Source: Octopus bimaculoides
Taxonomy: Eukaryota
Reading direction: 5' to 3'
Assembly (NCBI RefSeq): GCF_001194135.2
Contig: NC_069007.1
Location: 11,493,691-11,557,690, forward strand
DNA: 64,000 nucleotides
This document shows, in pieces, positions 1,379 through 53,270 of the stretch. Under the pieces are notes generated by a model, which saw only the letters and a list, made by a program, of their open reading frames with translations, was not told the DNA's origin and searched no databases. The translations under genes and the position numbers were made by a program. Position 1 is the first letter of the stretch. Every line of letters starts with the position of its first letter.

Positions 1379-1429
1379 TTGAAAACATTTTCGGATTTGT
1401 CTTTCAACTTATTTCTAATCTTTTTACAG

Positions 1430-2416
1430 CAGCAAAATGGAAACAGAACAGATGAGGAATCTCCTGAACAAACTTCACTTCTTTCAGTTCCCGAAGAAGA
1501 GACAACAGATGTTGTTGAAGAAGTATCACTTGATCTTCCGCCAAAGGAATATGATCAAAGAAAAGCATCAACTACATCAGGAATGAGCACTTCATCACTG
1601 TCTGAACTTATTGGGCGTTTCTTTCATAAGGGTGGCAGGCTCAAGAGTGAAAGGAATCCCACTTTGCCTGATCCAAATCTGCCTGGGACTAGTGGTGAGT
1701 CTTATAAAGATCGCATCAAAGAGGCGAGGGAATTGAGGAAACAAAACGTGAATGGCAAACAAAATCGACGACGTTCATCGCTTGCAAATTACCGGTCTTG
1801 GTGGTCTTACCTAAGAACCAGGCTGCCTGAAATAGCAGCATTAAACAATGAGCAGAACCAGAAACAGAGTGAAAAAATGACAATGAAACAGATGTATGAG
1901 AGACGGACTTCTTTGTTTAGCCACGATAAATCAAAATCGAAAAATGAATTTTTCAGACGATTCTCTCTAAACACCCCTTCCACAGAAAAAGAGCGGCATG
2001 AGGTGGCATCAACAAGCTCAACAATGAACATTCATCAAATAGTTGGCAGCTTTAAAGAGAGGTTCCATTCACATGACAATCCTTTGCATTCCAGGGCAAA
2101 ACAAAGGGAAAGACAAAGAAAGAGGAAATGCAGGGAGCACAACAAACGAAAAATGTACACCAACAATTCACAGGTAACTCGCTCCAGGTCACCTTCGTTT
2201 ACTGTACCTCAAAAGTCTTCCAAACATTCTCACAAAAGTAAGAAACGAAACCCTGCCTTCGCCAGTATTGATCAGGAAGCAGCTTATGTCAGTCTTATAA
2301 CACGACGCCGGACACTGGAACAAATGCGCAGGAGATATATGCACGATGTAGCAATGAGGAAGGAAACGGGGGGATTTGATAGTGACCCTCAGATCCCTGC
2401 AGATGTTGAACTATGA
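1430..2416 (+). CDS. 3' terminal coding exon of an unidentified gene; basic, Ser-rich, probably disordered C-terminal tail ending ...QIPADVEL
   Basis: About 330 stop-free codons in AT-rich DNA. The ORF track starts it at a TTG inside the intron. Branch-like ttctaat and tttttacag acceptor at 1427-1429 (phase 0, tandem CAGCAG). Tandem stops TGA TAA at 2414-2419. Repeated RRxSL motifs. Confidence 0.8.
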   Translation, partial: QQNGNRTDEESPEQTSLLSVPEEETTDVVEEVSLDLPPKEYDQRKASTTSGMSTSSLSELIGRFFHKGGRLKSERNPTLPDPNLPGTSGESYKDRIKEARELRKQNVNGKQNRRRSSLANYRSWWSYLRTRLPEIAALNNEQNQKQSEKMTMKQMYERRTSLFSHDKSKSKNEFFRRFSLNTPSTEKERHEVASTSSTMNIHQIVGSFKERFHSHDNPLHSRAKQRERQRKRKCREHNKRKMYTNNSQVTRSRSPSFTVPQKSSKHSHKSKKRNPAFASIDQEAAYVSLITRRRTLEQMRRRYMHDVAMRKETGGFDSDPQIPADVEL

Positions 2417-12200: not shown

Positions 12201-12716
12201 ACATCAATATCACCAAGTTAACTGAAATAATTTATACTGCAGACATTGTTAAGGAGGAAATTAGATACTTCCTCGTATCTACTCAAATAGAAATATCAAT
12301 GTCAAAGCAAACAACATGGAAAATTAACAGAAATAGAGGGAACATAAGATGAAAGAATTCTCAGTTGTTACAGAAATCAATAAGAAAATGACATAATTGA
12401 GAAAAAAAAATGGAGAACCAAACCTTGCAGAAATGAACACCTTGAACAAGAGATCATTATTAAAGTACAGAGAATTCATTTGTACGAAAAATAACAATGA
12501 TTATTTGAATGAAACAAAGTTTGACTCCAACCCAAGACAATTTTAAGCTCAGTAAAAATAAAACAGGAATCAATACAACACCAACAGCAACAGATGTGGA
12601 GTGGGGTGGACAGCTAAAGAATCACCACTGATGATATTACTTAAAACAACCAGCACAGTACATTATTTACATTATTTACATTTGATGGATATTCGTCCTC
12701 ATCTTGTTTGTTGTTA

Positions 12717-12760
12717 ACACAACATTTCGGCTGATGTACTCTCCAGCCTTCATCAGGTGT
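12717..12760 (-). ncRNA. Minimal type-I hammerhead ribozyme motif
   Basis: ACAC-CUGAUGA-A-GGCUG-GAGAGUACAU-CAGCC-GAAAUGUU-GUGU: stem I ACAC/GUGU, intact CUGAUGA and GAAA cores, 5-bp stem II, extra A after A9, stem III is a CpG-decayed AACGUU palindrome, GUU cleavage triplet. Confidence 0.8.
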
Positions 12761-12819
12761 CCTGAGGGAATTTCAAACCTGGGTTCTTATTACTATGGTA
12801 TTTTTCCGATGTTATTACA

Positions 12820-12857
<38 letters not shown>

Positions 12858-12868
12858 CATTATTATTA

Positions 12869-13204
12869 GTGAAGGTGCATGGCTCAGTGGTTAGAGTGTC
12901 GAGCTTACGATCGTGAGGTTGTGAGCTCGAATCCCGGACCGGGCTGCATGTTGTGTTCTTGAGCAAGACACTTTATTTCACGTTGCACCAGTTCAGTCAC
13001 CTGTAGAAATGATTTGCGATGTCACAGGTGCCATGCTGCATCGGCCTTTGCCTTTCCCTTGGATAACACTGGTGGCGTGGAAAGGGGAGGCCGGTATGCA
13101 TGGGCGACTGCTGGTCTTCCATAAAGAACCTTGCCCGGACTTGTGCCTGGGAAGGTAACTTTCTAGGTGCAATCCCATGGTCAGTCATGACCGAAGGGGG
13201 TCTC
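12869..13204 (+). mobile_element. Full-length tRNA-headed SINE family C inserted in an (ATT)n run
   Basis: TGGCTCAGTGGTTAGAG (box A), GAGCTCGAATCCC (box B), CORE-like TTGTGTTCTTGAGCAAGACACTT; flanked by (ATT)n on both sides. Confidence 0.85.
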
Positions 13205-13213
13205 AGCAGCATA

Positions 13214-13267
<54 letters not shown>

Positions 13268-13340
13268 TCACTGCCTGGAATCAAACTCAGAAGCTTGAGA
13301 TTAGTAGCCTGTGCTCTTAACCACTACGCCATATGCACAT

Positions 13341-13559
13341 GTTCGATCCCAGGCAGTGACCTGAAAAATAATAATGATAACAACAACATTAGAAAAATAC
13401 CATAGGAATGAGAACACAAGTTCGAAATTCCCCCAGGACACCTGATGAAGGCTGGAGAGTACATCAGCCGGAAGGTTGTGATAACAACAAACAACATGAG
13501 GACAAATATCCGTCAAATGTAAATAATGTACAGAATACCTCATTTCTAAAATACAGAAC
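13341..13559 (+). mobile_element. Inverted, head-truncated second arm of the hammerhead-bearing element
   Basis: Starts at box B GTTCGATCCCAGGCAGTGACCTG and mirrors 12655-13290 in the opposite orientation. Confidence 0.85.
13438..13481 (+). ncRNA. Hammerhead motif, probably inactivated
   Basis: ACAC-CUGAUGA-A-GGCUG-GAGAGUACAU-CAGCC-GGAAGGUU-GUGA; the GAAAC core is mutated to GGAAG. Confidence 0.65.
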
Positions 13560-14433
13560 CAACACAGTGTTGAAACAACCATGGTAAATCCCCTGACACA
13601 AATGGTAGCTCTAAACTGCAAAAATAATAAAACCCCAACAGTTTATTGATACCAGGACAGGGATACAAAGTCCTAGCAGAGATATTTGATAAAGTACTGA
13701 TGGAGATAGGGTCTATAACTGACTGATTCATTGAGGGGAAGCTATCTTGCTTCCTAACCCTGAAAACTAAACCCATGACCCGGCTTTCTACAGCTCACAA
13801 CACCTTAATTGCAGTAATATCACAGAGAATGAAGAAGCATCTAGAAGAAGCATGTAGAAGAAGCGCTAAGGGCAAAAGAGCAAAAGATAGTTCAAACAAA
13901 GAGCAAAAGAGATGCTTCAAAGCTTCCTGTCTGTAAAGATGACTTGCAGATCAATAAAACTATAATCAATAAAAGCATGAAATTAAAACAGAATATATGG
14001 AATAACTGTGGAATATGTGGAGGTTGGCAAGAAACGGTCATGTTGTCACTGGTTACTTTGTCGTAGTCAAGTAGGAATACATTTACAGGTACAGCAGAGG
14101 AATCAGAGTTAACATTCATTGGAAATTATAAAATTTGTGAAATACTAACTGGGATGTGTAGATAGTCACTAAAAAGTATTCTTTGAAAACGACAAAGCAA
14201 CCATACAGAGGGATATCCCAATATACTTTGGAAGAGAGATCAGGAAAAAAAGACGTCTCCTATTTGTAGTATCAAGCTTAACAGGTGACATTGCATTTCT
14301 GAAAGAAATGGAGAAATTATTGAAATATATTGTTATATTCAGGATGGTCATTTTTGTAGGGGTTTTTTGGCCAAATAAACATGCACTATATATTCGTCCT
14401 CCACTGTTCTTATTTTAACTCATGTCCATTGTC

Positions 14434-15599: not shown

Positions 15600-16300
15600 G
15601 TGAAGGCGCATAGCTTAGTGGTTAGAGTGTTGCACTCACGATTGTGAGATCGTGGGTTCGATTCCCAGACCGGGCGTTGTGTTGTGTTCTTGAGCAAAGC
15701 ACTTCATTTCGCATTGATCTGCGATCATTTCGACATCTGAAATGCGGTACACAGTGCACCTGTACAAATAATGTCGATTTGATGGAGGGAGTGTGCTTAT
15801 CTCTCTTTTACTCTTTATTCTTTTACTTGTTTCAGTCATTTGACTGTGACCATGCTGGAGCACCGTCTTCAGTCGAGCAAATCGACTCCAGGACTTATTC
15901 TTTGTAAGCCTAGTACTCATTCTATCAGTCTATTTTGCCGAACTGCTAAGTTACGGGGACAAAAACACACCAGCATCAGTTGTCAAGCGATGTTGGAGGG
16001 ACAAACACAGACACACAAACATATATACACACATGCATATATGTATATATACATATATACGACGGGTTTTTTTCAGTTTCTGAAATCCACTCACAAGGCC
16101 TTTGGTTGGCCCGAGGCTATAGTAGAAGACACTTGCCTATGTGGTTGGTGAGCAAGCTCCTTACCACACAGCCACTCCTATGCCACAAACATTTGATCAC
16201 TACAAACAAATCATCTGTGTGATTGTTTGGTAAGAAATTGTCAAACACTCAGATGTCATCTAATGACGGGAGAGTTCAATTGTCAACAGGGCATAACTAC
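15600..16300 (+). mobile_element. SINE family C copy interrupted by a family B SINE
   Basis: Head TAGCTTAGTGGTTAGAG...GGTTCGATTCCC at 15610-15666; the body resumes after 16184. Confidence 0.7.
15801..16184 (-). mobile_element. SINE family B (tRNA head, CORE-like domain, internal TA/TG microsatellite, GTAAAAGA tail)
   Basis: Matches copies at 32382, 35263 and 43527; probably an octopus OR-type CORE-SINE (name inferred). Confidence 0.8.
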
Positions 16301-32080: not shown

Positions 32081-32381
32081 TTCTTCAACTTATAATGAAG
32101 GAGCAAATATTCAACCTCTCAAGCTGTGTATACAAAATTGAAATTAAAATATTTATGACTTTCAACAAATGTAAAAAAAAATTTTTTTAAGTGTCATACT
32201 GTCATAATTAGATGATAAAAATTCAACAGGATTCAAATTGGTCTTAACGTCGAATGAGACAATATGCTAGAAATAGCAGTCAACCTCATTCAAATGACAC
32301 ATTCCAGCTTTAAAAAACAAAGCACGCTATGAATAATGTAGTCTTAGATAACTATGTCCATAAAGCAAAGATATATATATA

Positions 32382-32793
32382 GGCGCAGGCATGGCTATGT
32401 GGTAAGAAGCTTGCTTCTCAACTACATGGTTCTGGGTTCAGTTCTACTCTGTGGCACCTTGGGCAGGTGTCTTCTACTATAGCTTCAGGCTGACCAAAGC
32501 CTTGTAAGTGAATTTGATAGACGGAAACTGAAAGAAGCCTATAGTATATATATATATACACACACACGTGTGTGTGTGTGTGTATATATAAATGTATATG
32601 TTTGTGTGTCTGTTTTGTCGCTTGACAACTGATGTTGGCATGTTTATATCCCTGTAACTTAGTGGTTCAGCTAAAGAGATTGATAGAATAAGTACTAGGC
32701 TTACAAAGAATAAGTCCTGGGGTTGATTTGCATGACTAGCATGTTTGACCATTTGTTGACGATTTGTTTGACCAGCATGGTCACAGTCAAATG
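32382..32793 (+). mobile_element. SINE family B
   Basis: GGCGCAGGCATGGCTATGTGGTAAG head, GGTTCAGTTC box B, GTGGCACCTTGGGCAGGTG CORE-like segment. Confidence 0.85.
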
Positions 32794-34567: not shown

Positions 34568-35262
34568 ACATAAATACATATATATATCTTACATACTTTC
34601 TTTCTGAGACCCTGAAGGAGGATCTATGGTTGGAAAGACATTTCTTAAAGGAAGTTCCTGTACTTCCAATGTATTTCCTTGGATGTGTGGAGTCAGTGTC
34701 ATGTCTACTATTGCTGTTGTTGTTGCTGCTACCACTGCTGCAGTTGGTGCTGTTCTTGTTGTTGCAATTGTAGTTGTCGAGACTGATAGAATAAGTGCCA
34801 GGCATTAAAAAAGAATGGTACTGAGATCAAATCCTTCAAGGTGGTGCTCCAGCATGGCCACAGTCTCATGGCTGAAACAAGTAAAAGCTAAAACATGTTT
34901 GTATTTGTGTGTATATATTTACATTCGCACCCTTCTGATTAATGTCACTCATTTCAAGCGATGGGGTTGTTGTTGTTGTTGTTGTTGTTGTCGATTCTCC
35001 AGTCAAGAAATTGTTTGCCCCTTTCACACCTTCATAACCATGTCAAATAAGAGATCCCTCACTTCAAAATTTAATAAGGATTAACAACTGGAAGGGCATC
35101 CGACTATAAAACAGTATCTTGATAATATATTCACCTAACCCATGCCAGCATCGCAAAACTGACGTAAAATGAGTAAGCAAACACAGAGAAAGAGAGATAT
35201 AGATAGAGAAACTAAGTCCTCAACCTAATCATAACACAATATCTTGGTACAACATTTCCTAT

Positions 35263-35643
35263 ACTCTTTTACTCTTTTACCTGTTTCAGTCATTTAACTG
35301 CGGCCATGCTGGAGCACCGCCTTTAGTCGAGCAAATCAACACTAGGACTTATTCTTTGTTAGCTTAGTACTTATTCTATCGGTCTCTTTGGCCGAACCGC
35401 TAAGTTACGGGGACGTAAACACACCAGCATCGGTTGTCAAGCGATGTTGGGGGGACAAACACACACATATACATATATATGATGGGCTTCTTTCAGTTTC
35501 CGTTTACCAAATCCACTCACAAGGCTTTGGTCAACCCGAGGCTATAGTAGAAGACACTTCCCAAAGGTGCCACCTAGTGAGACTGAACCTGGAACCATGT
35601 GGTTGGTAAGCAAGCTACTTACCACACAGCCACTCCTGCGCCT
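35263..35643 (-). mobile_element. SINE family B
   Basis: Full head-to-tail match to the family B pattern on -. Confidence 0.85.
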
Positions 35644-36974
35644 ATAATCATGAATCAAAACCACTTCTTTCCTTCCTCCCTGCAAGTCATAGATGCTTTG
35701 CAAAAGGGTCAGTCTTGGGTACCNNNNNNNNNNNNNNNNNNNNNNNNNNNNNNNNNNNNNNNNNNNNNNNNNNNNNNNNNNNNNNNNNNNNNNNNNNNNN
35801 NNNNNNNNNNNNNNNNNNNNNNNNNNNNNNNNNNNNNNNNNNNNNNNNNNNNNNNNNNNNNNNNNNNNNNNNNNNNNNNNNNNNNNNNNNNNNNNNNNNN
35901 NNNNNNNNNNNNNNNNNNNNNNNNNNNNNNNNNNNNNNNNNNNNNNNNNNNNNNNNNNNNNNNNNNNNNNNNNNNNNNNNNNNNNNNNNNNNNNNNNNNN
36001 NNNNNNNNNNNNNNNNNNNNNNNNNNNNNNNNNNNNNNNNNNNNNNNNNNNNNNNNNNNNNNNNNNNNNNNNNNNNNNNNNNNNNNNNNNNNNNNNNNNN
36101 NNNNNNNNNNNNNNNNNNNNNNNNNNNNNNNNNNNNNNNNNNNNNNNNNNNNNNNNNNNNNNNNNNNNNNNNNNNNNNNNNNNNNNNNNNNNNNNNNNNN
36201 NNNNNNNNNNNNNNNNNNNNNNNNNNNNNNNNNNNNNNNNNNNNNNNNNNNNNNNNNNNNNNNNNNNNNNNNNNNNNNNNNNNNNNNNATATATATACAT
36301 ACATATATATATATATATACATACACATACATATACACACACATACATACACGGACACACATATATATATATATATATACATACACACACACATATATGT
36401 ATATGCATATATTTGTGTGTGTGCGTGCATATCGTATACACAGACACATGTATAGATATATGCACAGCTCATACATTTTTCATACACAAACACACATACA
36501 CATGTACACAGGCTCATATGCACATCATACACACAGAAGTAGACATGATGCACATTCATATATACACACCTATATATATATATTTTTATGTATACACCTA
36601 TATAATTATATACAGGCTTATCAAGAATATTGCTCACACACTCACAAACATACATACTTATCCATATGCATACACATATATACAAACACATACATAGAAA
36701 TAAGCTTTCATATGTATATACACATACACATCTATTTATGTTGCACCAATATGGAGGTGTCAGTTACTTACTGTACTAGAAATAGCAGCCAGAATGTATT
36801 ACACTGTTACTGCATTGCCCATCAGTCCATCCATGCCCACCATGTCTGTTTCTATACTCCAAAATTTTTCTTTTTCTGAGCACAATTTCTGTGATGTTTT
36901 TTTTTTAAAGGAAGTTTACAAATATCTGGTTCAACAATCTTCTTTTAGAAGGGTTTAGGAACAGCTTGGATGGT

Positions 36975-40021: not shown

Positions 40022-40400
40022 TGGCTGAGTGGTAAGAAGCTTGCTTCCCAACCACATGGTTCTGGGTTCAGTCTCATTGCATGACACCTTGGGCAAAGTG
40101 TGTTCTACTATACCCTTGGGCTGACCAAAGCCCTGTGAGTGGATTTGGTAGATGGAAACTGAAAGAAGCATGTCATATATATATATATATTTGTGTGTCT
40201 GTATTTGTCCCCCTGCCATTGCTTCTCAACTGATGTTGGTGTGTTTATGTCCCTCTAATCTAGCAGTTCAGCAAAACTGACTGATAGAATAAGTACCAGT
40301 CTTACAAAGAATAAGTCCAGGTGTCGATTTCTTTGACTGAAAGGCAGTGCTCCAGCATGGCCACAGTCAAAATGACTTAAACAACAAAGAGAATAAAAGA
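40022..40400 (+). mobile_element. SINE family B
   Basis: Head, CORE-like segment, internal microsatellite and tail all present. Confidence 0.8.
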
Positions 40401-43526: not shown

Positions 43527-43941
43527 TCTCTCTTTTACTCTTTACTCTTTACTCTTCTACTTGTTTCAGTCATTTGACTGTGGCAATGCTGGAGCACCGT
43601 CTTTAGTCGGGCAAATCGACCCCAGGACTTATTCTTTGGATGCCTAGTACTTATTCTATCTGTCTCTTTTGCCGAACCACTAAGTTACGGGGACGTAAAC
43701 ACACCACCATCGGTTGTCAAACGATGTTGGGGGGACAAACATATACAAACACATACATATATATATATATACATATATACGACGGGCTTCTTTCAGTTTC
43801 CGTCTACCAAATCCACTCACAAGGCTTTGGTCAGCCCGAAGCTATAGTAGAAGACACTTGCCCAAGGTGCCATGCAGTGGGATTGAACCTGGAACCATGT
43901 GACTGGTAAGCAAGCTACTTACCACACAGCCACTCCTGCGT
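43527..43941 (-). mobile_element. SINE family B, well preserved
   Basis: (CTCTTTTA)n tail at left; head ...CACACAGCCACTCCTGCG at right. Confidence 0.9.
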
Positions 43942-44369
43942 CTAACTTTTAGAACACAAACTTTTAGAACAAAATGTGAAGACGAAATGACCAGGGACCA
44001 GGAGATGTGATTTGCTGTACTTGATAAGACATGTCAAGCTAAATAAAAGCACTGTCTTCCACACGTACAGGCTTCTCCTTTCAGGTGCCAGTGCCACTTA
44101 AAAACCACCTGTGCCAGTGCTGCATTAATGCACCTGTGCTGATGTTACATAGATGCATTCATGCTGGTGTCGCTTTAAAAGGCAACATTAGGAAAGGCAT
44201 CCAGTCATAGAAACCATTCCACAACAGACAGTTGGAGTCTGGCCAGCAGATGTTGTTACACATTGCTGGCCACAGTGCACTTTTGCGTTGTTTTAGCCTT
44301 CAAAAGACATTGTCCCATTGGCTAGGCAAGCAGGCCAACATTCTCCCACTGATCAAAAGGAGGAGTAGA

Positions 44370-44488
44370 GCAACGTGAAGTGAAGTGTCTTGCCCAAGAA
44401 CACAACGCACTGCCCAATCATGGAATCGAACCCATGATCTAGCAATCATGAGTGTAAACAGCCTAACCACTAGGCCACACACCTTCAT
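44370..44488 (-). mobile_element. SINE family C head fragment
   Basis: Reverse complement has TGGCCTAGTGGTTAGG, GGTTCGATTCC and TTGTGTTCTTGGGCAAGACACTT. Confidence 0.7.
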
Positions 44489-45695: not shown

Positions 45696-46680
45696 TTATA
45701 ACATGGGATTGGCTATAAGCCTCTCCACACGTTGGGAAAATAGATGTCAAAAGACGCTGTTACCACCTTAAAATCTCCAAGAATAACACACTGGCTTGTA
45801 GGCGAGCAAAACAAAGATAATGAATTAAACTTTTGGTTAACCGTGTACAAGATCCTGTTTCAAGCTTAAAGTAAAAAGAACTATTGCTCACTGCTCTCAT
45901 CAGCAATGATATTCCATAGTATAAATTTATGAGTATCCACACATACGCATACGAGCAGCATCATCGCACAGCCAATAAATGTACACACTCGTAGAAATAC
46001 ACAGTAAAGTAGAATTCACAGGACTCTTTTACAACCATGTGTAGTATGCAGTAGTTTTTATTTCCGCGCTGCCCCCCTGGTAAAATCATTAATGATTTTT
46101 ACCCTTCATTATCATATATATATGTGTGTGTGTGTATATGTTTATATGTCTGTGTTTGACAACTGATGGTGTGTTTACGTTCCCGTAACTTTGCAGTTTG
46201 GCAAAAGAGACTGATAGAATAAGTACTAGGCTTACAAAGAATAAGTCCTAGCGAAGGTTCATTTGACTAAAGGTGGTGCTCCAGCATGGCCACAGTCAAA
46301 TGACTGAAACAAGCAAAAGAGTAAAAGAATACATACATATACATGTATACACAAGAGCAGTATAAAATATACAGCCATATGATATAGGGTTATAGAAAAT
46401 TATGCTATATAAATTAGTACGATATAAGATGGTGTATATATTTATGTGCAACAGTGTTTTGTATATAACAGTGTGTATATATTTGTAAATGTTCTACTTG
46501 AATTGAATTCATTTTTCCATCGAACTTATCTCAGTTTTTTTCTGATTTACTTTAATTCCCTTCTTTTGACAAAGAATATGACAATGAAAGGTCACACACA
46601 CATGCATATACATATATGCACATAGTGTCTACATACATACATAAATATACAAGTATGTACTCATATATACATTTATTTAT

Positions 46681-48836: not shown

Positions 48837-49457
48837 NNNNNNNNNNNNNNNNNNNNNNNNNNNNNNNNNNNNNNNNNNNNNNNNNNNNNNNNNNNNNNNN
48901 NNNNNNNNNNNNNNNNNNNNNNNNNNNNNNNNNNNNNNNNNNNNNNNNNNNNNNNNNNNNNNNNNNNNNNNNNNNNNNNNNNNNNNNNNNNNNNNNNNNN
49001 NNNNNNNNNNNNNNNNNNNNNNNNNNNNNNNNNNNNNNNNNNNNNNNNNNNNNNNNNNNNNNNNNNNNNNNNNNNNNNNNNNNNNNNNNNNNNNNNNNNN
49101 NNNNNNNNNNNNNNNNNNNNNNNNNNNNNNNNNNNNNNNNNNNNNNNNNNNNNNNNNNNNNNNNNNNNNNNNNNNNNNNNNNNNNNNNNNNNNNNNNNNN
49201 NNNNNNNNNNNNNNNNNNNNNNNNNNNNNNNNNNNNNNNNNNNNNNNNNNNNNNNNNNNNNNNNNNNNNNNNNNNNNNNNNNNNNNNNNNNNNNNNNNNN
49301 NNNNNNNNNNNNNNNNNNNNNNNNNNNNNNNNNNNNNNNNNNNNNNNNNNNNNNNNNNNNNNNNNNNNNNNNNNNNNNNNNNNNNNNNNNNNNNNNNNNN
49401 NNNNNNNNNNNNNNNNNNNNNNNNNNNNNNNNNNNNNNNNNNNNNNNNNNNNNNNNN

Positions 49458-49505
<48 letters not shown>

Positions 49506-49655
49506 AAGCTGCTTTCTGAGTCGTATACACTAATCTGGTCCATCACAGGAAATATTCATTTCCATCAGCTTAGTTACTGAAATAATGTGAAATGAAGTGT
49601 GTTGCTCAAGAACACAATGCACTGCATAATCCAAGAATTGAAACCACAATCCCAT

Positions 49656-49963
49656 GAATCTTGTGGTTAGTAGTCTGCGCTCTTAACCACTACACCATAT
49701 GCCCATGAGCATATGGCATAATAGTTAAGAGTGCGGGCTACTAACCCTAAGATTCCGAGTTCAATTCTATGCAGTGACCTGAATAATAATAATAATAACA
49801 TTGAAAAATACCTTAGGAATGAGAACCCAAGTTCGAAATTTCCCCAAGTCACCTGATGAAGGCTGGAGGGCCGAAACATTGTGTTAACAACAAACAAGAT
49901 GAGGATGAATATCCGTCAAATATAAATAATGTAAATAATTCCTCATCTCTTAAATATAGAACT
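49656..49963 (+). mobile_element. Second locus of the tRNA-headed hammerhead element: short inverted head plus full + arm
   Basis: 49657-49702 vs reverse complement of 49709-49754: 37/46 identical; the arms share the central CATG; then box B, (AAT)n and the body. Confidence 0.85.
49850..49883 (+). ncRNA. Minimal hammerhead motif with shortened stem II
   Basis: CAC-CUGAUGA-A-GGC-UGGAGG-GCC-GAAACAUU-GUG. Confidence 0.7.
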
Positions 49964-50559: not shown

Positions 50560-51440
50560 CGATGGCTGTGTAGTAAAAGGCTTGCTTCCTAACCACATGG
50601 TTCTAGGTTCAGTCCCGCTGCGTGGCACCTTGGGCAATGTAAATAATGTAGTCTCAGGCTGACCAAAGCTTTGTGAGTAGATTCTTTTACTTGTTTCAGT
50701 CATTGACTGCAGCCATGCTGGAGCACCGCCTTCAGTCGAGCAAATCGATCCCAAGATTTATTCTCTGTAAGCCTAGTACTTATTCTATCGGTTGCCGAAC
50801 CGCTGAGTTACAGGGACGTAAACACACCAGCATCAGTTGNNNNNNNNNNNNNNNNNNNNNNNNNNNNNNNNNNNNNNNNNNNNNNNNNNNNNNNNNNNNN
50901 NNNNNNNNNNNNNNNNNNNNNNNNNNNNNNNNNNNNNNNNNNNNNNNNNNNNNNNNNNNNNNNNNNNNNNNNNNNNNNNNNNNNNNNNNNNNNNNNNNNN
51001 NNNNNNNNNNNNNNATATACATACGACGGGCTTCTTTCAGGTTCCATCTACCAAATCCACTCACAAGGCTTTGGTCGGCCCAAGGCTATTGTAAAAGACA
51101 CTTGCCCAAGGTGCCACACAGTGGGACTGAACCCAGAACCACATGGTTGGTAAGCAAGCTTCTTACCACACAGCCACTCCTGCGCCTATATATACATATA
51201 TATATATATATACATATATGTATGTATGTATTTACATGTGAGTCTGTTTGTGCCCCACCATTGCTTGACAACCAATGTTGGTGTGTTTACGTCCCTGTAG
51301 CTTAGGAGTTTGGCAAAAGAGATCGATAGAATAAATACTAGGCTTACAAAGAATATATCCTGGGGTTGATTTGTTTGACTAAAGTTTGTGCTCCAGCATG
51401 GCTGCAGTCAGATGACTGAATCAAGTGAAAGAAGAAAAGA
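50560..51440. mobile_element. Family B SINE (-, 50683-51186) nested inside a family B SINE (+, head 50560-50680, tail 51240-51440)
   Basis: A + head, a complete - copy (with gap) and then a + tail. Confidence 0.7.
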
Positions 51441-52879: not shown

Positions 52880-53270
52880 TATCTCCAGGCATGGAGAGAT
52901 ACATTGCTTCCCAACCACATGGTTTGGCGTTCAGTCCCACTGTGTGGCCCCTTGGGCAACTGTCTTTTACTCTAGTTTTGTGCTGACCAAAGCCTTGTGA
53001 GTGGATTTGGTACACAGAAACTGAAAGAAGCCTGTTGTGTGTGTGTGTCTTAGTGTCTGTGTTTGTCCGCTTCAACTGCTTGATAACCAGTGTTAGTGTG
53101 TTTACATCCCTGTAATACATGAACTGTTCAGAAAAAGTGACCAAAAGAATGAATAACGAGCTTTAAAAAAAAAAAGGTACTGAGGTCAGTCAGTTTGACT
53201 AAAATTCCTCAAGGCAATGCTGTAATAAATTGCATGGCTGCCATCCAATGACTGAAACAAGTAAGAGATA
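52880..53270 (+). mobile_element. Degraded SINE family B
   Basis: Head, CORE-like segment and tail motifs recognisable. Confidence 0.7.

What the first reader, a model, noticed from the sequence alone, without database searches (positions are those of the whole stretch)
12655..13559. tRNA-headed retroelement carrying a minimal hammerhead ribozyme, inserted as a head-to-head inverted pair
Seen: on - the element reads CATG-TGCATA-TGGCGTAGTGG (exact Pol III box A), then a tRNA-like stem-loop, box B, (AAT)n, a body containing ACAC CUGAUGA A GGCUG...CAGCC GAAA(C/U)GUU GUGU, and an AT-rich end. An inverted second arm starts at the same CATG and runs outward on +, so each arm carries one hammerhead. 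Established: minimal type-I hammerheads with a palindromic stem III that forms only in dimers are typical of Penelope-like element pLTRs; PLE insertions often include an inverted partial copy; an extra nucleotide after A9 is tolerated (CChMVd hammerhead). Inference: this is a non-autonomous, Pol III-transcribed, self-cleaving SINE/retrozyme hybrid mobilised by PLE machinery rather than by a LINE. I do not know of such a tRNA-head plus hammerhead family described in cephalopods, but could not search.
Basis: partly seen in the sequence, partly recalled or inferred. Interest (0 to 1): 0.92.

Follow-up and report, generated by a model that had tools for sequence, protein, structure and literature searches.

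The report
Octopus tRNA-SINE carrying Penelope-type hammerhead
This is an old, decayed short retroposon family of Octopus bimaculoides that joins a tRNA-type Pol III promoter head to a 3' module holding a Penelope-type minimal hammerhead ribozyme; it is inserted the way Penelope-like elements insert, which makes it a cephalopod relative of the schistosome Sm-alpha elements rather than something unprecedented.

Summary
The window is Octopus bimaculoides.

**What is there**
- It holds three copies of one ~260-bp element: a Pol III box A/B head, an (AAT)n tract, and a 150-190-nt body.
- Two copies form the head-to-head pair at 12659-13559. A third lies at 49704-49962.
- The left arm is split by an unrelated nested SINE (12874-13215).

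**The hammerhead**
- Only the left arm has an intact minimal hammerhead (12716-12761, minus strand; 0.005 expected by chance).
- The right arm reads GGAAGG (A13->G).
- The third copy has a shortened helix I and helix II.
- The three-copy consensus keeps the motif and the Penelope-type traits: an extra base after A9, the G10.1-C11.1 pair, a 5-bp helix I and no helix III loop.

**How it was inserted**
- A 10/11 target-site duplication flanks the whole pair.
- Both outer ends are element 3' ends.
- A 29-nt tail is present on one arm only.
- These are Penelope-like insertion hallmarks.

**What remains untested**
- No autonomous partner was found.
- Three copies show no covariation.
- The active fold is not the predicted minimum-energy fold.
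- No cleavage data exist.

Pol III SINE-like elements with hammerheads are already known (Sm-alpha, Sj-alpha), so I rate this a new variant of a known kind, of moderate interest.

The parts
12648..12658 (.). Candidate target-site duplication, left copy (AACCAGCACAG), directly abutting the 3' end of the left arm
   Evidence: Matches 13557-13567 at 10/11. An alternative 12-nt match pairs 12641-12652 with 13570-13581 (11/12; P=0.004 for random window pairs).
12659..12813 (-). Left copy (L), 3' body module. It lacks the terminal 29-nt tail seen in the other two copies.
   Evidence: BLAST and MAFFT alignment to the R and C2 bodies; 86.5-88% identity, K2P 0.13-0.15.
12716..12761 (-). Intact minimal type-I hammerhead motif. 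Helix I GACAC/GUGUU; CUGAUGA; extra A; helix II GGCUGG/UCAGCC with an 8-nt loop; GAA; A15.1-U15.2-G16.2-U16.1; U17. Predicted cleavage is between 12721 and 12720.
   Evidence: Only descriptor hit in the window; 0.005 expected per dinucleotide shuffle. 93.5% of cells paired against 18-54% for slid controls. No Rfam hammerhead match.
12814..12873 (-). Distal half of the internal (AAT)n tract of copy L
12874..13215 (+). Unrelated tRNA-derived SINE ('sine2') nested in the (AAT)n tract of copy L. It is not part of the element but splits it.
   Evidence: Has its own box A/B pair at 12880. Related copies lie at 15600-15716 and 44370-44487.
13216..13263 (-). Proximal half of the (AAT)n tract of L. It cannot be told apart from the (ATT)n tail of the nested SINE.
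13264..13341 (-). Head of copy L. The 5' end CATG lies 10 nt upstream of box A. Box A 13321-13331 (11/11); box B-like 13277-13287 (9/11); spacing 33 nt; ends GCAGTGACCTG.
   Evidence: No T>=4 run in the sense strand of any copy.
13342..13384 (+). Right copy (R): 5'-truncated head (box B TGTTCGATCCC spans the junction at 13340-13350, then GCAGTGACCTG) and a short degenerate AAT tract. It joins L head-to-head at the CATG at 13338-13341.
13385..13530 (+). Right copy body. The hammerhead-derived segment 13437-13482 has GGAAGG in place of GAAAYG (A13->G) and a helix I mismatch.
13531..13559 (+). 29-nt 3' tail present in R and C2 but absent from L
   Evidence: Three-copy alignment. PLE insertions often carry a 30-40-bp tail at one end only (PMC8557442).
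13557..13567 (.). Candidate target-site duplication, right copy (AACCAACACAG). It overlaps the last 3 nt of the R tail.
49704..49962 (+). Third copy (C2), full length: head, (AAT)5, body and tail. Its hammerhead at 49848-49885 has an 8-nt deletion in helix II (still 4 bp), GAAACA, and only 3 bp in helix I.
49500..49707 (-). A different SINE ('SINE-M'). Its head is 86.5% identical over 52 nt but its body is of the core-domain type. It abuts C2 head-to-head and shares the single CATG at 49704-49707. Its 3' end runs into (AT)n and an assembly gap.

Best explanation
These are three roughly 15-20-million-year-old, now dead copies of a composite non-autonomous retroposon family of Octopus bimaculoides.

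**Shown**
- Each unit has a ~78-nt tRNA-SINE-type head with Pol III A and B boxes, a variable (AAT)n tract, and a 150-190-nt 3' module.
- The sense strand contains no T4 terminator.
- The family consensus of the 3' module keeps a complete minimal type-I hammerhead of the kind found in Penelope-like element (PLE) pseudo-LTRs.
- At 12659-13559 a full-length copy and a 5'-truncated copy lie head-to-head, both 3' ends facing outward, inside one target-site duplication.

**Inferred**
- Pol III starts about 10 nt upstream of box A, at the CATG. It reads through the element and stops in the downstream flank.
- The 3' module mimics the 3' end of a partner PLE and is recognised in trans by that element's reverse transcriptase and GIY-YIG endonuclease.
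- Both nicked target strands prime reverse transcription on two RNA molecules.
- The two cDNA ends are then joined at microhomology. The palindromic CATG at the RNA 5' end suits this.
- The result is the inverted pair in a single integration event.

**Speculative**
- The hammerhead probably came along as part of the PLE-derived recognition module.
- If it is active at all, it needs a second copy to build helix III through the ACGU/AUGU palindrome.
- It would then cut after GUU, separating the promoter head from the last 70-95 nt.
For: **Organism**
- The exon at 1379-2416 is 98% identical to an O. bimaculoides protein.

**One linked unit**
- All three copies share the same head-(AAT)n-body junction. 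R is truncated inside the head.
- nhmmer finds no body without a head, and no such head without this body apart from SINE-M.

**Pol III head**
- Box A 11/11, box B 9-10/11, spacing 33 nt. The geometry is identical to 8 other SINE heads in the window, against 0.13 expected by chance.
- No T>=4 run in the sense strand.

**Hammerhead**
- 1 strict hit and 2 relaxed hits, against 0.005 and 0.01 expected.
- The majority consensus keeps CUGAUGA, GAAA and helices I and II.
- The motif shows the traits listed for PLE minimal hammerheads in PMC4209133: an unpaired base between 9 and 10.1, G10.1-C11.1, a 4-5-bp helix I, a long helix II, palindromic 15.2-16.2, and dual motifs on opposite strands 100-700 bp apart.
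- Positions 15.2-16.2 read TG, GG and CA in the three copies. An ancestral CpG (ACGU) explains two of these by deamination.

**PLE-type insertion**
- There is an inverted 5'-truncated copy at the 5' end and a tail on one end only (PMC8557442; alignment).
- A 10/11 TSD abuts both outer ends.
- The arms are as diverged from each other (K2P 0.132) as from C2 (0.132-0.152). The pair is therefore as old as the family burst and is not an assembly artefact.
- Both loci of this family, and none of the other SINE heads in the window, have an inverted retroposon 5' end abutting at the CATG.

**Availability of machinery**
- Octopus genomes carry many Penelope families, some recently active, and about 900 unclassified SINE families (PMC13282606).
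Against: - Only three decayed copies could be examined. No further octopus copies could be retrieved.
- No autonomous PLE sharing the 3' module was seen, so the partner is inferred from resemblance only.
- There are no compensatory changes in the helices. The two variable helix I positions break pairs.
- The hammerhead fold is not the minimum-energy fold: monomer -13.1 against -19.5 kcal/mol, dimer -20 to -24.5 against -43 to -45. Both helix I strands sit in competing local hairpins.
- No Rfam hammerhead family matches.
- The TSD is ambiguous, with two overlapping candidates in an A/C-rich flank.
- At the second locus the inverted partner is a different SINE, which the simple PLE model does not predict.
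- PLE minimal hammerheads cleave poorly in vitro even as dimers.
Confidence: 0.58

Rival explanations
1. An ordinary LINE-dependent tRNA SINE. The hammerhead-like motif is a relic or coincidence with no link to PLE machinery, and the inverted arrangements come from independent insertions or LINE twin priming.
For: - Octopus SINEs are very abundant and mostly of LINE-dependent types: tRNA-Core and tRNA-Deu, with RTE and CR1 partners.
- The head is of the same type as other SINE heads in the window.
- No PLE partner was found, there is no covariation, and the hammerhead fold is not favoured.
Against: - The motif is about 100-200 times rarer than chance allows, and it carries several PLE-specific traits that the descriptor did not require.
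- The element ends in unique sequence, not in the simple-repeat tail seen on the neighbouring SINE.
- LINE twin priming gives an inverted internal segment, not two homologous arms each ending in the element's own 3' end.
- One TSD flanks both arms.
Confidence: 0.2
2. Two separate elements. A short head-only tRNA SINE has an (AAT)n tail, and a ~190-nt non-autonomous PLE-derived hammerhead module has inserted repeatedly into such microsatellite tails. Head and body would then not be one transposing unit.
For: - PLEs show an insertion bias for microsatellites.
- An (AAT)n tract sits exactly between head and body.
- The head is shared with another SINE family, SINE-M.
- Another SINE did insert into this same tract.
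Against: - All three copies have the same junction sequence on both sides of the tract.
- The R copy is truncated inside the head, as expected if the head was part of the reverse-transcribed RNA.
- No head-only or body-only copy was found in 64 kb + 24.7 kb.
- The outer TSD encloses heads and bodies together.
Confidence: 0.12
3. A foldback or MITE-type DNA transposon whose long terminal inverted repeats are the two arms.
For: 173-nt arms at 87% complementarity with a flanking short duplication.
Against: - The third copy is a single arm with a complete head and no homologous inverted partner.
- The arm termini differ, with a 29-nt tail on one side only.
- The centre of the structure is a Pol III promoter head.
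- The arms are as diverged from each other as from the unlinked copy.
Confidence: 0.03
4. A metazoan non-LTR retrozyme: tandem ~170-400-bp repeats expressed as circular RNAs through canonical type-I hammerheads.
For: The element is of similar size, AT-rich, non-coding and carries a hammerhead. Retrozymes are proposed to be PLE-dependent.
Against: - There is no head-to-tail tandem at either locus.
- The motif is the minimal form without a helix III loop, not the canonical type I, and Rfam Hammerhead_1 is not matched.
- It has an internal Pol III head, which retrozymes are not described as having.
Confidence: 0.04

Closest known systems
Sm-alpha / Sj-alpha SINE-like retroposons of Schistosoma (Ferbeyre et al. 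1998; Laha et al. 2000)
   Same: Short, non-coding, tRNA-derived elements that appear to be transcribed by Pol III, with a promoter followed by a type-I hammerhead, at high copy number.
   Different: - Sm-alpha carries a canonical hammerhead with a short helix III and loop. It cleaves in vitro and in vivo, and it often sits in tandem arrays.
- Here the motif is the PLE-type minimal form without a helix III loop.
- The copies are dispersed or in inverted pairs, cleavage is untested, and the host is a cephalopod.
Minimal hammerheads in pseudo-LTRs of Penelope-like elements (Cervera & de la Pena 2014; Lunse et al. 2017)
   Same: The same ribozyme architecture: a 4-5-bp helix I, an extra base between A9 and G10.1, G10.1-C11.1, a longer helix II, no helix III loop and palindromic 15.2-16.2. 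Dual motifs are often on opposite strands 100-700 bp apart. The insertion architecture also agrees.
   Different: No reverse transcriptase / GIY-YIG reading frame lies between or beside the motifs. The unit instead starts with a Pol III tRNA-type head. Sequence similarity to a real octopus PLE end could not be tested.
Non-autonomous PLE derivatives (MRC1 and other non-autonomous Chlamys elements in Chlamydomonas; vertebrate non-LTR retrozymes proposed as PLE derivatives)
   Same: Short non-coding elements thought to borrow PLE machinery through a shared 3' end or pseudo-LTR region.
   Different: Those elements form pseudo-LTRs or head-to-tail tandems and have no reported Pol III tRNA head. Here there is no tandem and a SINE-type head is present.
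Classical LINE-dependent tRNA SINEs of octopus (tRNA-Core, tRNA-Deu; the OK/OR families of Ohshima & Okada 1994)
   Same: A head with A/B boxes at the same spacing, a similar length, a dispersed distribution and a related head in another family in this window.
   Different: The body has no core domain, there is no terminal simple-repeat tail, it carries a hammerhead motif, and it shows the head-to-head insertion topology.

Membership tests
SINE (Pol III-transcribed non-autonomous retroposon) | Internal Pol III promoter: box A and box B at tRNA-like spacing | tested here: met
   Box A 11/11, box B 9-10/11, spacing 33 nt. There are 9 such pairs in the window against 0.13 in shuffles.
SINE (Pol III-transcribed non-autonomous retroposon) | Head derived from a tRNA (recognisable cloverleaf) | tested here: not met
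   ARAGORN finds nothing for the L and C2 heads even at 70% thresholds. Rfam reports no tRNA at E<=10. The related SINE-M head gives a weak tRNA-Leu-like call at 70% only.
SINE (Pol III-transcribed non-autonomous retroposon) | Short, non-coding, several dispersed copies with 5' truncation and target-site duplication | tested here: met
   ~260 bp; three copies at two loci; one copy is 5'-truncated; a 10/11 TSD surrounds the pair. Only three copies were available.
SINE (Pol III-transcribed non-autonomous retroposon) | 3' end shared with an autonomous partner element | not testable with these tools
   No octopus genome or repeat library was searchable. The one PLE-like reverse-transcriptase fragment met (L012 4164-5000) lacks its 3' end.
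PLE-type minimal hammerhead (Cervera & de la Pena 2014 descriptor) | CUGANGA and GAAA boxes with helices I and II in type-I order | tested here: met
   Met by L under the strict descriptor, by C2 under the relaxed one, and by the three-copy consensus. R fails through A13->G.
PLE-type minimal hammerhead (Cervera & de la Pena 2014 descriptor) | Unpaired nucleotide between A9 and G10.1; G10.1-C11.1 pair | tested here: met
   An extra A and the G-C closing pair are invariant in all three copies.
PLE-type minimal hammerhead (Cervera & de la Pena 2014 descriptor) | Palindromic 15.2-16.2 allowing a dimeric helix III | tested here: inconclusive
   The copies read UG, GG and CA. An ancestral CG is plausible through CpG decay but is not resolved with three copies.
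PLE-type minimal hammerhead (Cervera & de la Pena 2014 descriptor) | Compensatory changes within a consensus family | tested here: not met
   0 pairs changed on both sides among three copies. The data are too few to carry weight.
PLE-type minimal hammerhead (Cervera & de la Pena 2014 descriptor) | Self-cleavage (as a dimer) | not testable with these tools
   Only energy models were possible. The active fold is 6 kcal/mol (monomer) to about 20 kcal/mol (dimer) above the minimum.
Rfam hammerhead families (Hammerhead_1, _3, _II, HH9, HH10) | Match to the covariance model | tested here: not met
   No match at the gathering score or at E<=10, even on an 81-nt search. This is expected for motifs without a helix III hairpin.
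Penelope-like element insertion | Inverted 5'-truncated copy adjacent to the 5' end; 30-40-bp tail at one end; variable TSD | tested here: met
   The L/R pair, the 29-nt tail on R only, and an 8-11-bp TSD. Criteria taken from PMC8557442.
Penelope-like element insertion | Reverse transcriptase plus GIY-YIG endonuclease reading frame, or a pseudo-LTR made by partial tandem copies | tested here: not met
   Nothing but the heads and a nested SINE lies between the arms. There is no long reading frame and no direct partial copy.
Metazoan non-LTR retrozyme | Head-to-tail tandem repeats, each with a canonical type-I hammerhead | tested here: not met
   No direct repeat of the unit at either locus. The motif is minimal, not canonical.

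The most novel reading that the evidence does not exclude
Octopus genomes hold a family of Pol III-driven tRNA-type SINEs that parasitise Penelope-like elements rather than LINEs. They do so by carrying the PLE 3' recognition module, minimal hammerhead included, and they integrate through the PLE two-strand priming route as head-to-head pairs. If general, SINE-like carriers rather than truncated PLEs could account for part of the thousands of dispersed 'orphan' minimal hammerheads reported in animal genomes.
Probability: 0.45. Interest if true: 0.65.

Novelty: new variant of a known kind. Interest (0 to 1): 0.5.

Why it matters
- SINEs are defined by their dependence on LINE partners. In the literature I could search I found no documented tRNA-headed SINE that uses Penelope-like machinery. 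The schistosome Sm-alpha elements come closest, but the papers read here tie them to no partner.
- Such a family would offer a small, abundant reporter for how PLE reverse transcriptase and GIY-YIG endonuclease recognise their template and produce inverted insertions.
- It would suggest a source for the many dispersed minimal hammerheads in invertebrate genomes.
- It would help classify some of the ~900 'unclassified' octopus SINE families.
- The copies in this window are old and inactive, so the value lies in the family, not in this locus.

Tried and rejected
**Searches that found nothing useful**
- Rfam at gathering and at E<=10 gave no hammerhead and no tRNA. The only hits were sub-threshold miRNA-like ones, caused by the inverted heads.
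- ARAGORN found no tRNA.
- Exact-pattern scans of metagenome, prokaryote-genome and viral collections with conserved 19-36-nt stretches gave only chance prokaryotic hits or none.
- I tried to fish more copies from public assemblies through spurious reading frames. Six-frame pieces of the body gave no hit. Frames of the most abundant SINE in the window gave three proteins and one usable locus, L012 (24.7 kb), which holds no copy.
- The gene overlapping the window start spans 212 kb, so its DNA could not be fetched.
- A full-text search of papers for the element's own sequence strings gave nothing.
- Supplements of the key PLE papers are not held. Lunse 2017 and Ferbeyre 1998 are not held either.

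**Leads that went nowhere**
- A PLE-like reverse-transcriptase fragment in L012 lacks its 3' end and gave no Pfam hit, so it could not serve as a partner test.

**Readings rejected**
- MITE or foldback transposon.
- Retrozyme.
- Chance motif.
- Assembly artefact: the arms are 13% diverged and there is no gap at the junction.
Full report
**Source.** The 345-codon open frame at 1379-2416 is 98% identical to an annotated Octopus bimaculoides protein on assembly GCA_001194135.2. It is SINE-rich. Nine box A + box B pairs with 32-34-nt spacing occur in 64 kb, against 0.13 in shuffles. One ~400-bp family alone has more than ten copies.

**Anatomy of the finding.**
- Read on the minus strand from 13341, the sequence is CATGTGCATA, then TGGCGTAGTGG (box A, 11/11, 13321-13331).
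- After 33 nt comes AGTTTGATTCC (box B, 9/11, 13277-13287), then GCAGTGACCTG and (AAT)n.
- The tract is interrupted at 13215-12874 by a complete, unrelated plus-strand tRNA-SINE with its own A/B boxes.
- The tract then resumes (12873-12814) and leads into a 155-nt body (12813-12659).
- On the plus strand, starting at the same CATG, lies a second copy that begins inside box B (TGTTCGATCCC). It continues with GCAGTGACCTG, a short AAT tract and the body, and ends at 13559.
- BLAST and nhmmer find one further copy at 49704-49962. It is full length, with the same order of head, (AAT)5 and body.
- All three copies share the junctions on both sides of the AAT tract, and the right arm is truncated within the head. 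The simplest reading is that head, tract and body were reverse-transcribed as one RNA.
- No copy has a run of four T in the sense strand. The full-length 5' ends lie 10 nt upstream of box A. Both points fit Pol III transcription.
- The head is tRNA-like only through its promoter boxes. ARAGORN and Rfam see no cloverleaf.

**The hammerhead.**
- A descriptor modelled on the published minimal motif finds exactly one site in the window, 12761->12716 on the minus strand, against 0.005 per dinucleotide shuffle. The descriptor requires helix I of at least 4 bp, CUGANGA, an optional extra base, helix II of at least 4 bp, GAAA, 0-6 inner bases, U16.1 and H17.
- A relaxed version also picks up the third copy, against 0.01 expected.
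- The right arm fails because GAAA has become GGAA (A13->G) and helix I has a mismatch. 'One hammerhead per arm' is therefore true only by descent.
- The majority consensus of the three copies keeps every conserved element.
- The motif shows the features that Cervera and de la Pena list as typical of metazoan PLE hammerheads and that were not built into their search: an unpaired base between A9 and G10.1, the G10.1-C11.1 pair, a short helix I, a longer helix II, and no helix III loop with a palindromic 15.2-16.2. They also note pairs of motifs on opposite strands 100-700 bp apart.
- Positions 15.2-16.2 read UG, GG and CA. An ancestral CG, giving the palindrome ACGU, would explain two of the three by CpG deamination, but three copies cannot settle it.

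**Evidence against activity.**
- There are no compensatory changes.
- The two helix I variants break pairs.
- No Rfam hammerhead model matches, even on an 81-nt search.
- The active fold lies 6 kcal/mol above the monomer minimum and about 20 above the best dimer. Both helix I strands are taken up by local hairpins.
- Published PLE minimal hammerheads also cleave poorly in vitro.

**Insertion topology.**
- The two arms point outward, each ending in the element's own 3' end.
- The 11 nt directly left of the left arm (AACCAGCACAG, 12648-12658) recur at 10/11 at the right arm's end (13557-13567).
- A second, overlapping 11/12 match also exists (12641-12652 / 13570-13581; P=0.004 for random window pairs). 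The exact duplication is therefore ambiguous, but either candidate encloses both arms.
- The right arm and the third copy carry a 29-nt terminal tail that the left arm lacks.
- Body distances are star-like: L-R 0.132, L-C2 0.152, R-C2 0.132. The pair is thus as old as the family burst and is neither a recent duplication nor an assembly palindrome.
- Craig et al. describe exactly this for PLEs. [quoted passage not shown]
- LINE twin priming would instead give an inverted internal segment, not two homologous arms with their own 3' ends.
- At the second locus the full-length copy also abuts an inverted retroposon 5' end, sharing a single CATG. That partner is a different SINE with a related head.
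- Two cDNAs that both end in the palindrome CATG could anneal there. This is my inference, and the mixed pair remains unexplained.
- None of the other SINE heads in the window shows such a junction.

**Best explanation.**
- This is a composite tRNA-type SINE whose 3' module is derived from, and recognised by, a Penelope-like element. It was inserted by PLE-style priming on both target strands.
- Octopus genomes have the machinery. The curated O. vulgaris annotation counts about 30 Penelope families with 329 recent insertions, together with about 900 unclassified SINE families.
- The partner itself could not be tested. No cephalopod genome is searchable with the tools at hand, and every route to more copies failed.
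- The only PLE-like reverse-transcriptase fragment met (locus L012) lacks its 3' end.
- I put 0.58 on the whole statement. I put about 0.85 on 'one composite Pol III SINE family with a PLE-type minimal hammerhead' and about 0.3 on the ribozyme being catalytically competent.

**Comparison with what is known.**
- Pol III-transcribed, tRNA-derived SINE-like elements with a hammerhead are established in schistosomes as Sm-alpha and Sj-alpha.
- Minimal hammerheads are established in PLE pseudo-LTRs.
- Non-autonomous PLE derivatives are described in green algae and proposed for vertebrate retrozymes.
- What I did not find in the searchable literature is this combination: a tRNA-type head plus a PLE-type minimal hammerhead module with PLE-type insertion. 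I also found no report of a hammerhead-bearing retroposon in cephalopods.
- The family may well sit unnoticed among unclassified SINEs in repeat libraries.
- I therefore rate it a new variant of a known kind, of moderate interest (0.5) rather than the 0.92 first proposed.

Noticed in passing
window 12874-13215 (+): A complete, unrelated tRNA-derived SINE with a core-domain-like body (…TGTGTTCTTGAGCAAGACACTTTATTTCAC…) and an (ATT)n tail is nested in the (AAT)n tract of the hammerhead element. Related heads lie at 15600-15716 and 44370-44487.
   Followed up: partly
window 49500-49707 (-): 'SINE-M' has a head 86.5% identical over 52 nt to the hammerhead element's head but a core-domain body. It suggests the hammerhead family borrowed its head from a conventional octopus SINE. 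Its exact 5'-to-5' junction with copy C2, sharing one CATG, is unexplained. Its 3' end is lost in (AT)n and the gap at 48837-49457.
   Followed up: partly
window 15807-16137, 32380-32738, 35259-35644, 40022-40397, 43541-43945, 46114-46325, 50563-51440, 52904-53115 and others: A very abundant ~400-bp SINE family with an internal (TA)n/(CA)n microsatellite has more than ten copies in 64 kb. Many assembly gaps sit next to these microsatellites.
   Followed up: partly
window 13232-13395 and 49659-49752: Sub-threshold Rfam 'miRNA precursor' hits (MIR5380 at 50 bits against a gathering score of 150; MIR7533 at 29 against 230) are simply the hairpins formed by the head-to-head SINE heads. If co-transcribed, the 173-nt arms at 12662-12834 and 13364-13536 could form long imperfect double-stranded RNA, a possible ADAR substrate in an animal with heavy RNA editing.
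   Followed up: no
window 12728-12755 (-) and 13443-13470 (+): In the L and R copies, the 8-nt stretch that copy C2 lacks (AGUACAUC) creates CAUCAG, which is complementary to the catalytic-core CUGAUG. This 6-bp alternative pairing is mutually exclusive with helix II and the active core.
   Followed up: no
window 1379-2416 (+): A long open frame (345 codons, ending in a stop) is 98% identical to O. bimaculoides 'peptidyl-prolyl cis-trans isomerase 1-like', probably its last coding exon. The annotated gene spans 212 kb. An 86%-identical homologue occurs in Logan contigs of runs SRR11869385, SRR11869391 and SRR11869394.
   Followed up: partly
window 33337 (+) and 34557 (-): Two copies of yet another tRNA-SINE family lie in convergent (tail-to-tail) orientation about 1.2 kb apart.
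   Followed up: no
L012 4164-5000 (-), O. bimaculoides CM046623.1: A 279-codon frame has motifs I recall as typical of Penelope-like reverse transcriptases (AMGTKxAPxYAN, RYLDD, FLG, HYKPTD…SNHP), followed by a CxxCxxC linker. It is cut off by a microsatellite before the endonuclease and by a 4.6-kb gap upstream. Pfam gave no hit at E<=0.01, so the assignment rests on memory only.
   Followed up: partly
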